Source of the DNA: Octopus sinensis
Lineage: Eukaryota
Length of the DNA: 64,000 nucleotides
Direction: 5' to 3'
Assembly (NCBI RefSeq): GCF_006345805.1
Contig: NC_043013.1
Span: 43,028,001 to 43,092,000 of the forward strand
Both the position numbers and the translations under genes were made by a program. The notes under the pieces were generated by a model. That model searched no databases, was not told where the DNA came from, and was given only the letters and a program-made list of their open reading frames with translations. Below, piece by piece: positions 42,701 through 48,700 of this stretch; the first letter of the stretch is position 1; every line of letters starts with the position of its first letter.

Positions 42701-45700
42701 ATACAGTGTATTTATTTAGATCAAGCACATTAATGTAAAGTTGTATGGTGTAGGTTTGCCAGTTTTCACTTGCATCAATGTTGAAATTATAATCCATTAA
42801 AGTCCTTTAAAATTGTCTATAGATGATGATGATGCTATTTCTAAATAATTATTTTATTGTTACAGTTCTTTGGTTTCTAAGCCCAAAGCTGCCAAAAAAG
42901 GTAATTTCTTTTTTTCTTTTGCATGTTTTCTCACATTCTCTTTGCTTACTTTCTAAGCTTGTTGCTTTTCTTTGAATTATTTGAAATTCTGACCTTACTG
43001 GGTTGCATTTCCTCATCATCTTTTTGTATTTATTGATACATTCTTATATTAATAGGCAACAACCAAGCCAATCGGAATTTGTGGGTCAGTGGTTTTCCTG
43101 CAAATGTCTCTGATAAATTCATAACCGCAATTTTTAGCAAATATGGCAAGGTATGTTGAATGAAATCTGTTTTCATCCTTCAATAATTGTTATTTATTAA
43201 TAATGATTGTCATGGTCTTCACAATTGTTTTGATATCCACTTTTCCATGCTTTTATGGGTTGGGCAGAGTCTACTGAAGATTTTCTAGTCAGATGCTTTT
43301 CCTGTCATCAGCCCTTACTTGTTACCAAGCAAGGCAATATTTCCCTGATGGCCAGACATGTTTTTGCATTCATTTACAACAATCATGCGACATCAAGACA
43401 GAGAGAGAGACTGACAGACACACACACACATAGACAGAGGCTTCGTTCAATTTATCTTTTCAAATTTTGTCACTGCATAGCACCATGAGTGAGTGTCCTG
43501 GGCCAATCAAAGCCTTGTGAGTATTCAAAATATCAACACCAGTCTAATGTGTGTCTTGTCATCCTGCAGATAATGAGTAATCATGTAGGGTGGTCAGGCG
43601 TTTTTCTCTTTTTTTCATTCAGTAGGTTCATCAAATGTGTACACTCCTAAAAATCGTTGATGCTTTCTATGGGGTTTGCTCTGTTGCAAGTACACCATGA
43701 TATATTGCAGTCTTTGGAATTGTGCTACAAGCACCAACAATTGTCGAACTATACTCACTTCCAACATTTCAAATGTGATAAAGAAAGTCCTAACAACCAT
43801 CTGTTCCAGCCGTTTAAATGTCTCTCCCTCCTTAATGACTACCAGTAAGGCTTTTGAATAGACGTATTCGCTGCAGACCTATTCATTTGTCTCTTACCAG
43901 TGGGGTTTTACTTTTAACAAAAACCTTTGGTGCAAACAACAGTGTTGTTTTTTGACATCAGTCATGCCTTCAACTGTGCCTGGCTTGTAAGTCTCTCAGC
44001 AAATCTAACCATCTGTAAGTTTATTAATTGGAAATTTCCTGTCAAATCACTCAGCCTGCACATAGCGCTTTCTTAGACACACATTCTGTCAGCATTGGTG
44101 TACCAAAGGTTTAGTTTTGTCTTTTTAAACATCAGTCATTTACTTTCCATCATCTTCAACAAAGCTTGTGCAGGAGTAGGTATTATTGAATCCTATCTCA
44201 CTGTTTGCCCCCAAGAATAGTCCTTAAGATTGTACAAAACCTATACTAACTTGATCCTAGTCCTTGAAAACATTTTTCAACAGGATTATGCCAACCTTGA
44301 CTCCTCCGCCAACAATCATCATCATCAATCTTCTAGACATAAATAGCACACAGCTGAACCTTCAAAGTCTTTACAAAAGCTTAGCCTCACCGTCAATAAA
44401 GTTCTCACTGAACATATAAATTCAACATAGCAACGCCTGTAATCACAAAGACTGGATTTCCACTGTAGAGACAGAATATACTCCAACTCCTCCCCCAAAA
44501 TCATCTGATTTTCTTGCCAGTACTCTCCAACCTCTAATCGAAAGATATGTTGGCTTCTCTCTCTGCTTTTGCAACAGTTAGTTACTTGAGCAAAACTTGT
44601 TCTTTGGTGCTAGCTTGTGTTGTGTCACTTCCAATTGAACAGCCCTTACTCACTTGTTTCTAAACCTAACCCCATACTCCACACTAATCTCTATTCTCAG
44701 TCCCTTTTTCCTCATTGCAGCTGTCTCGGAGCCTGTTAACACCATAGACACCGCCCTTTCCTTGGGTTCAAATCACTAGAACAAAAATTACTGCATTTGA
44801 TGGTATATAAAATGCATTTTAGAGAAATGTCTCAAATAGTCACCCTTAATCCTGTATGCAATATTGGGCTTCAATGCACTAAAAACATTCTCTTGTAGGT
44901 ATTACTGCTGAAATTGAGGCATATCCAATATGTCCATGTGTCTTTTATGCCATCAAATATGGTAATCTCGGCTATTTCCTTCTCCTGCTTCCTGAAGTGA
45001 GTTTTACTTAAAATCTACAGCATCATTCTAATGACAATTTAGAATTGATATTTTGTTACTGGGGAAGGAGGCGTGCTGGCAGAAATGTTAGCATGCTGGG
45101 GAAAATACTTAGTGGTATTCCATCTGTTTTTATGTTCTGAGTTCAAATTCTGTGTTTTGCTGCCGTGGTTAGATGGGCAGTTTTTCGTGGGAGATTGGTG
45201 ACATGTCTCCTCTCTCCACCACCACCAGTGTTATCCAAGGGAAGGGCAGGGGCCAATACGGCTTAGCACCAGTGCGGTTGTAGGAGTTGCCAGAACAAGA
45301 TTATCTACAACATCGAGCTGCCTTAGGGACTCTGGCACCTGGTTTATCCTCAGAGTTTACTCCTGAAGCCTTTCCTTTAAGTGGGTATTGCTGCAAGGCA
45401 GTGGAGTCATTATTTATTGCTGCTGTCTTAAGCAGATAAGGGCTTAATAAGCAGTATAACTTGTAAAGATAATTGCTTATTTGGATGGCCATTGGCTCTT
45501 CAGAGTTCATTTGCCTTTTGACAGGTCTTGTATTTATTCCTGCAGGGTGACCAAATAGCAAGAGAAAACACCCTCCCAGAACAAGCTCTATGGTGCTGTC
45601 GGTTTAGTCGCCAAAGGCCCGACATCTGGCACCTGTGAAAAAAAAAATAGAGACAGAGAGAAAGAGAAAGAATGAAAGGCGAGGGTCATTTGGTTCCCCA

Positions 45701-48700
45701 CAATATTTGACATTTTCTTTGTAGTCATGCTGAAACATGAATTTGGGACATCAATTGCTGGTGTTTACCTCCACCCCAGGTCAAGTGGCAGCCTGTTTAC
45801 TCTGTCGAGGCTGAAAGCAAAATCCAGGGTGTGCTAGGTACTTGTCAGAGAAATGCTGTTTGCATACAATGCAGCAGCACTCTCTGCAGAGCAAACACAA
45901 CACCTCACGGACAAACTCTCGAAGGCCTGTCAGAAATTGAGCCTGACTGTCAGTCTGAGGAAGACCCAAGTAATAGGTCAAGCATGCTCCCACCATCATC
46001 ATCAACAACTACAAGCTCGAGGTAGTCCATCAATTCACCTATCTCAGCTCTACCATTGCTGATGACCTCTCCCTGGACCCTGAGATCAACAGGCAAATTG
46101 GACATGCATCTTCCACATTTGCCAGGCTCAGAAAGAGAGTCTTGGAAAACAAAAATCTGGCTGCAAACACCCAAATTGTTATCTATAAAGCGTGCATTCT
46201 TAGTATGCTACTTTATGGCAGTGTGACGTGGAGCCTCTACTCTAGACAGGAGTGGCGTCTTATCGTCTTTCACCTTCGCAATTAAATAGGCATCTTGGAC
46301 ATCAAGTGGACTGACCACATCACCAACGCCGAAGTCTTCAACCGAGCCAAGATACCCAGCATACACTTCTTGCTCCAGCAGTTTCGTTTGAGCTGGTTCG
46401 GTCATGTTCATCACATGCCAGACGAAAGGATCCCAAAAGACCTGTACGGGGAATTGGTTACCAGCACAATAGCATGAGGAGGACCTCATCTTCATTTCAA
46501 AGACGTCTGTAAGAGAGATATGAAGTTGCTTGATCTGGACGTCCTGAGATGGGAGGAGGTTGCAAATGATTGCCCACACTGGCGACAAATACTGCAAAAG
46601 GGAATGAAGAGAGGGGATGAAAAATCAGCAACACCAGCAGAGAGCGCCTTCAGATGTAGTCTCAGCATGCATGACTGCCACTCCTGTGTGGGGCTGTACA
46701 GCCACAACAGACGCTGCACCACCATCAGCTGCTGACATGATTTATTTGGGCTCAGATCCACGTCCTCTTGAGACCGATGGATGCCTACTACTACTATTGG
46801 GGATGATACTGTTGGTGTTGACTATGAAGCTGAGTACATACTGAATTTTTCATGCATAAAATTTTGACTCTTTATTCTCTCTTAGGTGGCGGATTGCCAA
46901 ATGATTACACGATCACGGAAATCTGGTACTCGATGTCATGCCTTTGTTACTATGTCTACTGAGGCCGAAGCTTTGCAATGTATAATGTGGTTGAATAAAT
47001 CTCATGTGAATGGTATGAAATTAACAGTTGAAAGGGTGAGACATCCTCAATTTATTGTTTTGTTTATAAACCAAATGGTCAGCTATTCATCATCATCATC
47101 ATCATCATCATCATTTAGCGTCCGTTTTCCATGCTAGCATGGGTTGGACGGTTCAACTGGGGTCTGGGGAGCCCGAAGGCTGCACCAGGCCAGTCAGATC
47201 TGGCAGTGTTTCTACAGCTGGATGCCCTTCCTAACGCCAACCACTCCGAGAGTGTAGTGGGTGATTTTATGTGCCACCGACACAGGTGCCAGACGAGGCT
47301 GGCGAACGGCCACGCTCGGATGGTGTTTTTATGTGCCACCGACACAGGTGCCAGACGAGGCTGGCAGACGGCCACGCTCGGATGGTGTTTTTATGTGCCA
47401 CCGACACAGGTGCCAGATGAGGCTGGCGGACGGCCACGATCGGATGGTGTTTGTTACGTCCCCAAAGCACGGAGGCCAGTCTATGCGGTACTGGCTACGG
47501 CCACGTTCGGATGATTTTCTTGTGTGCCACCGGCACTGGTACCACAAAGATACAAATTCCATTTATGTTCATCTATTTTGATTTGATTTGATTTTCACTT
47601 GCCTCAACAGGTCTTCACAAGTGTCACAAGAAGGAAGGAAGGTATGCACAGGTGGACTGACTACGTCCCAAGTAGGGGCCACGGGTTATGGCCTGACTAG
47701 TCTTGCCGGGTCTTCGGATGGTGTTTTTATGTGCCACCGACACAGGTGCCAGATGAGGCTGGCGAACGGCCACGATCGGATGGTGTTTGTTGCGTGCCCA
47801 CAGCACGGAGGCCAGTCGATGCGGTACTGGCTACGGCCACGTTCGGATGGTTTTCTTGTGTGCCACCGGCACTGGTACCACAAAGATACAAATTCCATTG
47901 ATGTTCATCTATTTTGATTTGATTTGATTTGATTTTCACTTGCCTCAACAGGTCTTCACAAGTGTCACAAGAAGGAAGGAAGGTATGCACAGGTGGACTG
48001 ACTACGTCCCAAGTAGGGCCCACGGGTTATGGCCTGACTAGTCTTGCCGGGTCTTCGGTTGGTGTTTTTATGTGCCACCGACACAGGTGCCAGATGAGGC
48101 TGGCGGACGGCCACGATCGGATGGTGTTTGTTATGTGCCCACATCACAGAGGCCAGTCGATGCGGTACTGGCTACGGCCACGTTCGGATGGTTTTCTTGT
48201 GTGCCACCGGTACTGGTACCACAAAGATACAAATTCCATTGATGTTCATCTATTTTGATTTGGTTTGATTTGATTTGATTTGATTTTGATTTTCACTTGC
48301 CTCAACAGGTCTAGAATATGTGATCAGCCTTGTTTGTTCCTCTTCTCCTCTTAATAGATTCAATTGTGGGAAGTGTGAGTTCAAGTTGTAGGGACAAAAG
48401 TGAAAGAAGTAAACATATTTCCATTGGGAAATAGGAACAGGTGGTGTAGGGACAGAGAGAAGGTTGTGTGTGTACATGTGTGGATATGAGAGACAGAATA
48501 TGGAAGTGTTACTATTGGGATGCAGAAGGTCACTTCTTGACATAGATGTACATCAACTTTTGAGTGAAGTTGTGTTAAGTAACTATAGTTATATAGATGG
48601 TTAGCTATTAAAGTGTGTGTTTTTGCATTGTCAGTTGTTGCAGGAGATTGAGATATATATGTGGCTAGCTATTTAAAGAAGTGGATGTAGGTAGATATGT

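What the first reader, a model, noticed from the sequence alone, without database searches (positions are those of the whole stretch)
43056..47035. Accelerated divergence of the RRM in copy B
Seen: the RRM exons share only 34 of 81 residues between copies (manual count). Exon 46886..47035 is 62% identical to 7547..7696 at nucleotide level, while only 5 of its 20 conserved codons carry synonymous changes. RNP1 RCYGFVTM becomes RCHAFVTM and helix 1 [14 protein letters not shown] becomes FPANVSDKFITAIF. Length, frame and splice sites are intact. Established: this RRM is normally the most conserved part of SAFB across animals, and SAFB proteins bind purine-rich RNA, including LINE-1 transcripts in mammals. 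Inference: positive selection or changed RNA specificity, possibly directed at lineage-specific transposon RNA in a TE-rich genome.
Basis: partly seen in the sequence, partly recalled or inferred. Interest (0 to 1): 0.8.

Follow-up and report, generated by a model that had tools for sequence, protein, structure and literature searches.

The report
Octopus SAFB paralogue with remodelled RRM
One of two neighbouring octopus copies of the RNA-binding gene SAFB has had more than half of its normally almost unchangeable RNA-binding domain replaced in an old burst and then kept, so it is a working paralogue with a new surface and not a decaying copy, though what it now binds is unknown.

Summary
The window is Octopus sinensis CM016875.1:43,028,001-43,092,000 and holds two tandem SAFB genes. 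Copy B (RefSeq XP_029646790.1) has RRM exons at 43056-43150 and 46886-47035. They share 34/81 residues and 62% (exon 2) nucleotide identity with copy A.

Copy A's RRM is 72-83% identical to insect and vertebrate SAFB. Polarising with 28 outgroup RRMs puts 33 changes on B and 4 on A. The RRM has the highest dN/dS of any shared exon (about 0.9, against 0.06-0.54).

B is not decaying:
- It reads as an intact 825-aa gene in O. sinensis and O. vulgaris, and the exons recovered from O. bimaculoides (locus partly covered) are open.
- The same B-type RRM occurs in a second O. sinensis paralogue (B2) and in one unidentified contig.
- 24 B-specific residues are invariant across those sequences, and crown dN/dS is 0.38.
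- The hydrophobic core is kept and the predicted fold is canonical.

My own branch-site test favours positive selection on the B stem (p about 0.003). The signal rests on 22 multi-hit codons, and the branch-wide omega of 1.75 is not significantly above 1. The transposon-RNA idea is untested. B-types also lack the roughly 135-residue linker after the RRM.

The parts
43056..43150 (+). Copy B RRM exon 1 (beta1/RNP2, helix 1). RNP2 NLWVSG is kept. All 13 residues at positions 13-25 differ from copy A.
   Evidence: It matches XP_029646790.1 residues 369-401.
46886..47035 (+). Copy B RRM exon 2 (beta2, RNP1 RCHAFVTM, helix 2, beta4).
   Evidence: It is 100% identical to O. vulgaris CAI9735049.1 residues 401-450.
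4705..4799 (+). Copy A RRM exon 1, ancestral-type.
7547..7696 (+). Copy A RRM exon 2, ancestral-type, RNP1 RCYGFVTM.
24567..24701 (+). Copy B first coding exon: ATG plus SAP domain.
   Evidence: Pfam SAP 41 bits..
39957..40443 (+). Copy B large acidic exon. Its 3' end and the following intron (40303-40530) are almost identical to copy A 2779-3000, a gene-conversion tract.
42866..42900 (+). Copy B 35-nt exon (SSLVSKPKAAKK) just upstream of the RRM.
50436..50623 (+). Copy B exon f (K/R/E-rich). It is joined in frame directly to RRM exon 2, because the three linker exons of copy A have no counterpart in between.
52072..52182 (+). Copy B coiled-coil exon, the most conserved exon between A and B (omega 0.06-0.10).
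52502..59777 (+). Copy B C-terminal exons h (52502-52648), i (58208-58408), j (58601-58737) and k (59434-59777, stop). All are open and have AG/GT borders.
9110..10797 (+). Copy A linker exons (9110-9191, 9936-10067, 10607-10797) encoding about 135 K/E/S/R-rich residues. They are absent from B-type genes.

Best explanation
Copy B is a functional, lineage-restricted SAFB paralogue, the 'B-type', in a tandem and inverted cluster of at least six SAFB genes in Octopus.

Shown:
- After the A/B duplication, the B stem replaced about half of the RRM's residues and then settled under purifying selection.
- This happened well before the O. sinensis / O. bimaculoides split. The A-B synonymous distance (about 0.5) is of the order of the Octopus-Argonauta distance (0.55).
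- The hydrophobic core, RNP2 and most of RNP1 were kept.
- B-types lost the linker exons after the RRM. They kept the SAP domain, the coiled-coil exon and the C-terminal region.

Inferred from helical periodicity and conservation:
- The replaced residues are the solvent faces of both helices, the edge strand beta2, the beta2-beta3 loop, beta4 and one stacking residue of RNP1 (Y49H).

Inferred mechanism:
- The protein still folds as an RRM, still sits on chromatin or DNA through SAP, and can still pair with A-type SAFBs through the coiled coil.
- Its RRM presents a new interaction surface. That gives altered RNA preference and/or a new protein partner, so B-type subunits would diversify or modulate SAFB complexes.
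- The burst was most likely driven by selection for the new surface and not by a passing loss of constraint.
For: Identity and structure:
- Window = O. sinensis CM016875.1; A = XP_036366417.1; B = XP_029646790.1.
- B reads open from SAP to stop with AG/GT borders at every exon defined here, the short 5' exons being placed by protein match only.

Other B-type sequences:
- O. vulgaris orthologue, 95-97% nucleotide identity.
- O. bimaculoides orthologue with open RRM, f, h, i, j and k exons.
- Second B-type paralogue B2.
- A further B-type exon on contig L001.

Direction and size of the change:
- 33 B-derived against 4 A-derived changes.
- 40 positions separate the A and B types, and 24 of them are invariant among the five B-type sequences.

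Omega:
- Pairwise RRM 0.90, against 0.06-0.54 elsewhere.
- ML branch model: background 0.11, stem 1.75, B crown 0.38.
- Branch-site p = 0.003-0.006, and 0.0003 without the helix-1 block.
- Controls and 36 null simulations are clean.

Fold:
- Pfam RRM_1 42 bits.
- AF2 pLDDT 88.6 with the canonical topology; A gives 87.1.
- Foldseek hits are RRMs with TM 0.71-0.83.
- Core positions change only conservatively (L13F, L22I, L25I, V38I, L72V, I77L).

Origin in place:
- Flanking intron homology.
- The best single-RRM relatives of the B RRM in 1.84 billion representative proteins are SAFBs, at 46% or less.
Against: - The branch-wide omega on the stem is not significantly above 1 (2dlnL 1.14).
- The branch-site signal depends on 22 codons with two or more changes. 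Single-change codons are 24 N to 7 S, about neutral.
- The tests use my own code on 81 codons and 9-10 sequences.
- O. sinensis against O. bimaculoides B gives omega 0.92 (7 N, 2 S). B-type RRMs therefore still evolve fast, and constraint is weaker than in A-types.
- Gene conversion makes the loci mosaics, which blurs dating.
- No expression data, RNA-binding data or partner data were available.
- The O. bimaculoides annotation of B is fragmentary.
- The AF2 alignment was mostly A-type sequences.
Confidence: 0.6

Rival explanations
1. Relaxation, then re-capture. After duplication the B RRM drifted neutrally (omega about 1) for a period because A covered the ancestral function. Whatever surface had arisen then became useful and was frozen. 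No adaptive drive acted during the burst.
For: Stem omega of 1.75 is not significantly above 1. Single-change codons are at the neutral N:S ratio. Pairwise omega is about 0.9.
Against: - The branch-site null, which is exactly this model, is rejected at p about 0.003, and 0 of 36 null simulations reach the observed value.
- Core and RNP2 residues stayed conserved through the burst, so the domain was never free of constraint.
- RRM dS (0.35-0.60) is not raised relative to other exons, while dN is the highest.
Confidence: 0.3
2. Copy B is a decaying or non-functional duplicate, and its RRM divergence is erosion.
For: - Pairwise dN/dS near 1.
- O. sinensis against O. bimaculoides omega is 0.92 on few changes.
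- The O. bimaculoides annotation is fragmentary.
- The linker exons are lost.
Against: - An intact 825-aa frame with canonical splice sites at every exon border examined in O. sinensis, and intact in O. vulgaris.
- The recovered exons are open in O. bimaculoides.
- B-crown omega is 0.38.
- Helix 2 and RNP1 are identical in five B-type sequences whose synonymous distances reach 0.38.
- Exon 2 is more conserved than its flanking introns between species: 96.7% against 89-92%.
- The fold is predicted with confidence.
Confidence: 0.04
3. The B RRM exons were not diverged in place but imported from another RRM gene, or are a mosaic artefact of gene conversion.
For: - The helix-1 block of 39 nt shows little more than the identity expected by chance, well below the roughly 70% of the flanking intron.
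- Conversion tracts exist elsewhere in the genes.
Against: - Exon length, phase and splice sites are identical to A.
- The introns on both sides align with A's.
- The nearest single-RRM relatives of the B RRM are SAFBs, and no other family is closer.
- Shifted reading frames of the block do not restore A-like sequence (my reading).
Confidence: 0.04

Closest known systems
Vertebrate SAFB family (SAFB1, SAFB2, SLTM) and Drosophila Saf-B
   Same: - N-terminal SAP domain, central single RRM, E/R-rich coiled-coil region and G-rich tail.
- Copy A's RRM is 72-83% identical over its whole length to the insect and vertebrate SAFB RRM fragments retrieved.
- Like mammals, Octopus has several paralogues.
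   Different: - Vertebrate paralogues keep the RRM nearly unchanged. The B-type changed 47/81 residues, including the RNP1 Y-G pair that is invariant in 28 outgroups.
- B-types lost the K/E/S/R linker after the RRM.
[quoted passage not shown] Octopus sinensis has at least six in one cluster.
RefSeq and ENA predicted proteins XP_029646790.1 ('SAFB-like transcription modulator isoform X1', O. sinensis) and CAI9735049.1 (O. vulgaris)
   Same: This is the same gene. XP_029646790.1 carries the window's own residues wherever the O. vulgaris protein differs.
   Different: They are automatic names only. The name 'SLTM' implies orthology to vertebrate SLTM, which the tandem origin from an octopus SAFB contradicts. 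I found no paper on octopus or cephalopod SAFB genes.
Host transposon-control genes under recurrent positive selection (for example the primate TE repressors in PMC12994711)
   Same: A member of a TE-suppressing family has a rapidly changed nucleic-acid-recognition module and gene-family expansion in a TE-rich genome.
   Different: - No link between B and any transposon is shown.
- The change was one old burst followed by constraint, not a continuing arms-race pattern.
- Many of the changes lie off the RNA-binding face.

Membership tests
SAFB family | N-terminal SAP domain | tested here: met
   Pfam SAP 41 bits on exon 24567-24701, and 38 bits on XP_029646790.1. 41/45 residues are identical to copy A (my count on the alignment).
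SAFB family | Single central RRM homologous to the SAFB RRM | tested here: met
   Pfam RRM_1 42 bits. Exon structure and flanking introns are homologous to copy A. The nearest single-RRM relatives are SAFBs.
SAFB family | SAFB-type RRM signature (RNP1 RCYGFVTM, helix-1 TRATDLK), invariant in 28 outgroups | tested here: not met
   B has RCHAFVTM and VSDKFIT. Twenty positions invariant in the outgroups are changed.
SAFB family | E/R-rich coiled-coil region and G-rich C-terminus | tested here: met
   Exons f-k align with copy A at 54% identity. The coiled-coil exon has omega 0.06-0.10.
SAFB family | K/E/S/R-rich linker between the RRM and the E/R region | tested here: not met
   RRM exon 2 is spliced in frame to exon f. 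No remnant was found between 47036 and 50435.
SAFB family | Binding of purine/A-rich RNA and suppression of TE exonisation | not testable with these tools
   This needs CLIP, RNA Bind-n-Seq or knock-down. Published only for human, mouse and fly SAFB (PMC10901741).
Canonical RRM | beta1-alpha1-beta2-beta3-alpha2-beta4 fold with RNP2 and RNP1 aromatic residues | tested here: met
   - AF2 pLDDT 88.6 with the canonical topology.
- Foldseek hits are RRMs with TM 0.71-0.83.
- W9 (RNP2) and F51 (RNP1 position 5) are kept. RNP1 position 3 is His instead of Tyr.
Processed or unprocessed pseudogene | Stops, frameshifts, lost splice sites, omega about 1 in all lineages | tested here: not met
   None of these is present in three species. 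B-crown omega is 0.38.

The most novel reading that the evidence does not exclude
Octopods expanded SAFB, described in mammals and flies as a pattern-guided RNA defence against transposons, into a multigene cluster. They evolved by positive selection a B-type subunit whose re-surfaced RRM recognises a different class of RNA, for example lineage-specific transposon or repeat transcripts in the TE-rich octopus genome, or recruits a new effector. That would be an invertebrate case of adaptive diversification of the SAFB system.
Probability: 0.15. Interest if true: 0.8.

Novelty: new variant of a known kind. Interest (0 to 1): 0.55.

Why it matters
SAFB's RRM is among the most conserved RNA-binding domains in animals. 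SAFB proteins were recently described as a general RNA-level brake on transposon exonisation and L1 retrotransposition, with invertebrates said to carry one copy (PMC10901741).

Octopus carries at least six copies. One subfamily kept the fold but replaced the domain's surface and dropped the adjacent linker. That gives a natural experiment for three questions:
- Which RRM surfaces set SAFB's RNA and partner specificity?
- Do RNA-binding-protein families diversify in TE-rich cephalopod genomes?
- Does a 'non-adaptive' defence system acquire adaptive branches?

If the change is merely a neutral burst later frozen, it remains a clean example of fold-preserving neofunctionalisation of an RRM.

Tried and rejected
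1. My first hand-built gene model was wrong in three places. It put the big exon's donor at GCTAAAG|GT, had no 35-nt exon, and started exon f at 50463. The annotated proteins corrected it. The RRM exons were unaffected.
2. I searched for B's counterparts of A's linker exons between 47036 and 50435, in six-frame fragments and in L001. Nothing was found.
3. A compensated frameshift as the cause of the helix-1 block is rejected. The shifted frames contain stops and are not A-like.
4. I first treated L001 (Logan SRR11869390) as an orthologue from another species. It is 75-77% identical to both the O. sinensis and O. bimaculoides B loci, and 85% identical to B2 around the exon only. It may be an orthologue from a more distant octopod or a third paralogue. 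The run accession is in no paper searched.
5. Introns as a uniform neutral yardstick are rejected. A/B identity ranges from about 65% to 100% because of conversion tracts.
6. No SAFB RRM came up in sequence searches of the PDB.
7. Rfam and tRNA scans of the window were empty.
8. Four look-ups of shorter isoforms (P0128, P0126, P0124, P0131) found no gene on record.
10. Spliced B transcripts in Logan-derived proteins: none were retrieved. None were retrieved for octopus A either, so this says nothing about expression.
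Full report
**What is at the coordinates**

The window is Octopus sinensis chromosome record CM016875.1 (GCA_006345805.1), positions 43,028,001-43,092,000, plus strand. Locus L003, fetched for RefSeq protein XP_036366417.1, matches window 1-21257 at 100%.

Two SAFB genes lie head to tail.
- Copy A has its 5' end off the window and its stop at 20257. 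It is 'scaffold attachment factor B1' (XP_036366417.1).
- Copy B runs from the ATG at 24567 to the stop at 59777. It is XP_029646790.1, automatically named 'SAFB-like transcription modulator isoform X1'.

The finding's interval runs from B's RRM exon 1 (43056-43150) to B's RRM exon 2 (46886-47035). The A counterparts are 4705-4799 and 7547-7696. All four exons have AG/GT borders, equal lengths and equal phases.

**Check of the observation**

- 34 of 81 residues are identical.
- 93 of 150 nucleotides are identical in exon 2.
- 20 conserved codons in exon 2 include 5 with a synonymous change.
- The two quoted motif changes are as stated.

Copy A's RRM is the ancestral form. It is 72-83% identical over its whole length to SAFB RRMs from insects and vertebrates, and up to 86% in exon-2-only hits. 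Forty-one positions are invariant in an 18-sequence alignment.

Polarising the 47 A/B differences with 28 distinct outgroup RRMs gives 33 B-derived, 4 A-derived, 9 ambiguous and 1 neither (binomial p = 1e-6). Twenty B changes hit positions that never vary in the outgroups.

**Is the RRM special within the gene?**

Yes. Nei-Gojobori dN/dS between A and B, by exon:

| Exon | dN/dS |
|---|---|
| RRM exon 1 | 1.06 |
| RRM exon 2 | 0.84 |
| Acidic exon | 0.49 |
| f | 0.29 |
| Coiled-coil | 0.06-0.10 |
| h | 0.27 |
| i | 0.54 |
| j | 0.24 |
| k | 0.38 |

- The RRM has the highest dN (0.37-0.51), while its dS (0.35-0.60) is ordinary.
- At protein level the N-terminal region is about 76% identical, with SAP at 41/45 (both my counts on the alignment). 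The C-terminal half is 54% identical and the RRM 42%.
- Nonsynonymous against synonymous counts in the RRM compared with the rest give a Fisher p of 0.03.

**B is a live gene and belongs to a subfamily**

B reads as one open frame from the SAP exon to the stop. Every exon border defined here is AG/GT; the short 5' exons were placed by protein match only.

Five further sequences or copies matter.
- The O. vulgaris orthologue (CAI9735049.1, locus L002) is 95-97% identical in DNA.
- O. bimaculoides has an orthologous locus (L008) with open RRM, f, h, i, j and k exons. Its introns are 84-94% identical. The L008 locus starts only about 5 kb upstream of RRM exon 1, so the 5' exons of the O. bimaculoides gene were not examined, and exon g and the start of exon k were not recovered.
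- O. sinensis carries a second B-type copy, B2, about 100-140 kb away on the other strand. It is paired with an A-type copy X in the same order and spacing as A and B.
- A sixth sequence, contig L001 from Logan run SRR11869390, holds another B-type exon 2.
- Altogether the cluster has at least six SAFB genes: P0127, X and B2 on the minus strand, and Z, A and B on the plus strand.

Constraint on the B-type RRM (unless stated):
- Forty RRM positions separate all A-types from all B-types.
- Twenty-four of these are invariant among the five B-type sequences.
- Helix 2 and RNP1 (RCHAF.TMSTEAEALQCIMWLNKS) are essentially fixed.
- Between O. sinensis and O. bimaculoides, exon 2 is 96.7% identical against 89-92% for its flanking introns.
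- All B-types lack the three exons that encode about 135 K/E/S/R-rich residues after the RRM in A (9110-9191, 9936-10067, 10607-10797).

**Tempo**

Synonymous distances in the RRM:

| Comparison | dS |
|---|---|
| A-types among themselves | 0.07-0.16 |
| O. sinensis B vs O. bimaculoides B | 0.04 |
| B vs B2 | 0.26 |
| B-types vs L001 | 0.26-0.38 |
| A-type vs B-type | 0.40-0.57 |
| Octopus A vs Argonauta | 0.55 |

- The B-type is therefore old, and most of its changes were fixed before the B-type sequences diverged from one another.
- My maximum-likelihood codon branch model gives omega 0.11 for background, 1.75 for the B stem and 0.38 within the B crown. The stem value is not significantly above 1 (2dlnL 1.14).
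- A branch-site test of the model-A type, with the stem as foreground, gives 2dlnL 6.4-7.9 (p 0.003-0.006) for four topologies. Without helix-1 codons 13-25 it gives 11.95. For exon 2 alone it gives 4.63. About half the sites have omega 4.6-9.9.
- Using the A-type stem or the Argonauta branch as foreground gives 0.
- Thirty-six data sets simulated under the fitted null gave at most 3.8.

The weakness is that 22 of the 53 changed codons differ at two or three positions, and the signal rests on them. The 31 single-change codons are 24 nonsynonymous to 7 synonymous, against 73% expected neutrally (p = 0.37). Multi-nucleotide mutations are a recognised cause of false positives in this test (this rests on my own knowledge, not on a paper I read here). 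The code is my own and the alignment is short. I therefore call positive selection likely but not established.

**What changed in the domain**

- Both RRMs are predicted as canonical beta1-alpha1-beta2-beta3-alpha2-beta4 folds: pLDDT 88.6 for B and 87.1 for A.
- Foldseek returns ordinary RRMs with TM 0.71-0.83.
- Pfam RRM_1 scores 42 bits for B against 52 for A.
- Differences fall on 16 of 22 helix residues, 17 of 30 loop residues and 14 of 29 strand residues.
- Positions that helical periodicity and conservation mark as core are kept or changed conservatively: L8, V10, L22I, L25I, F26, V32, V38I, F51, V52, M54, A60, C63, I64, L67, L72V, I77L, V79.
- The exposed faces of both helices are replaced. 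Helix 2 becomes more hydrophobic (S61L, Q65M, H66W).
- On the RNA face, W9 and F51 stay. RNP1 position 3 is His instead of the invariant Tyr, and position 4 is Ala.
- Beta2, the beta2-beta3 loop (S43K, P44S) and beta4 (R75M, M76K) are rewritten.
- NMR work on human SAFB2 places RNA-induced shifts on RNP1, RNP2 and the C-terminal part of the RRM (PMC9958909). Some B changes therefore lie where RNA binds, but most do not.
- The most conserved exon between A and B is the coiled-coil exon. That fits retained pairing with other SAFBs, which is an inference.

**Rivals**

- Decay is excluded by the intact frames, the crown constraint and the fixed B-type signature.
- Import of foreign exons is unlikely. 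The introns on both sides align with A's, and no RRM family is closer than SAFB: at most 46% in 1.84 billion representatives, with the only B-like hit being P0121.
- A neutral burst later frozen remains the serious alternative.
- Gene conversion is active in these genes. There is an almost identical tract at A 2779-3000 / B 40303-40530, and B and B2 are 98.95% identical over 2.95 kb. This makes the loci mosaics and the dating rough. It cannot create the direction of change, because the A state equals the outgroup state.

**Comparison with what is known**

- SAFB1, SAFB2 and SLTM bind adenosine- and purine-rich RNA, including L1. They suppress TE exonisation and retrotransposition. Fly Saf-B behaves similarly. 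The same paper states that invertebrates have a single orthologue (PMC10901741, sections 5 and 10).
- The octopus cluster contradicts that generalisation.
- Full-text searches found no paper on octopus or cephalopod SAFB genes.
- The gene itself is already in RefSeq as an automatic prediction. Its 'SLTM' name is misleading, since it arose within the octopus cluster.

**Verdict**

There is a real, lineage-specific, fold-preserving remodelling of the SAFB RRM, followed by constraint.
- Positive selection is probable, at roughly 0.6.
- Altered RNA specificity is possible, but a new protein-contact surface is at least as likely.
- A link to transposon RNA is speculative.
- It is a new variant of a known family and of moderate interest.

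Noticed in passing
window 2779-3000 and 40303-40530; also window 39000-41936 vs L006 50307-53257: A tract that is almost 100% identical between copies A and B crosses the exon/intron border of the acidic exon. B and B2 are 98.95% identical over 2.95 kb. Surrounding introns are 65-77% identical. This is recent gene conversion among cluster members.
   Followed up: partly
window 3850-4140 and 41335-41620: There is a conserved island in the intron before the RRM: about 92% A/B identity against about 75% around it. It contains an AG...GTAAGC-bounded 42-nt segment with a stop codon in two of the three frames of copy A and one of copy B. The exact 36-mer is also present in O. vulgaris B, the P0127 copy and B2, but not in X, Z or Argonauta. 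There is no Rfam match. It could be a regulatory or poison exon.
   Followed up: partly
window 13372-13497 and 16131-16238: Copy A carries a tandem duplication of its coiled-coil exon within a duplicated segment of about 2.7 kb. Both copies are in frame and both are used in XP_036366417.1. Copy B has one.
   Followed up: partly
window 47088-48312: An insertion sits directly after B's RRM exon 2. It holds a (TCA)9 run, 62-bp repeats and a 341-bp unit repeated 2.7 times. It is absent at the same position in O. vulgaris, O. bimaculoides and L001, so it is specific to O. sinensis or to this assembly.
   Followed up: partly
CM016875.1 42.857-43.088 Mb (loci L004, L006, L005, L003, window): At least six SAFB genes lie in two inverted arms. 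The literature describes invertebrates as having a single SAFB. RefSeq isoform XP_036366413.1 joins A-type 5' exons to the B2 RRM exons, so either read-through/chimeric transcripts or model artefacts exist.
   Followed up: partly
L007 1-2895 (minus strand), Argonauta hians BAAFZT010000080.1: Argonauta has a second SAP+RRM gene head to head with its SAFB gene. Whether its RRM is B-like could not be seen, because the look-ups were exhausted.
   Followed up: no
proteins P0130 and P0134 (Acanthosepion pharaonis): The cuttlefish also has more than one SAFB-like gene. One gene model has two RRMs in tandem, probably a fusion of neighbouring genes. Another has a moderately divergent RRM (…THLKGIFAKYG…NRTKINNQTVTVKS). 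It is not B-type.
   Followed up: no
window 4518-4558 and the A isoform XP_036366417.1: The annotated 'KNITG' junction of isoform X2 needs non-canonical splice sites. The canonical GT donor gives 'KNMRS', as in the P0127 copy. This is probably an annotation quirk.
   Followed up: no
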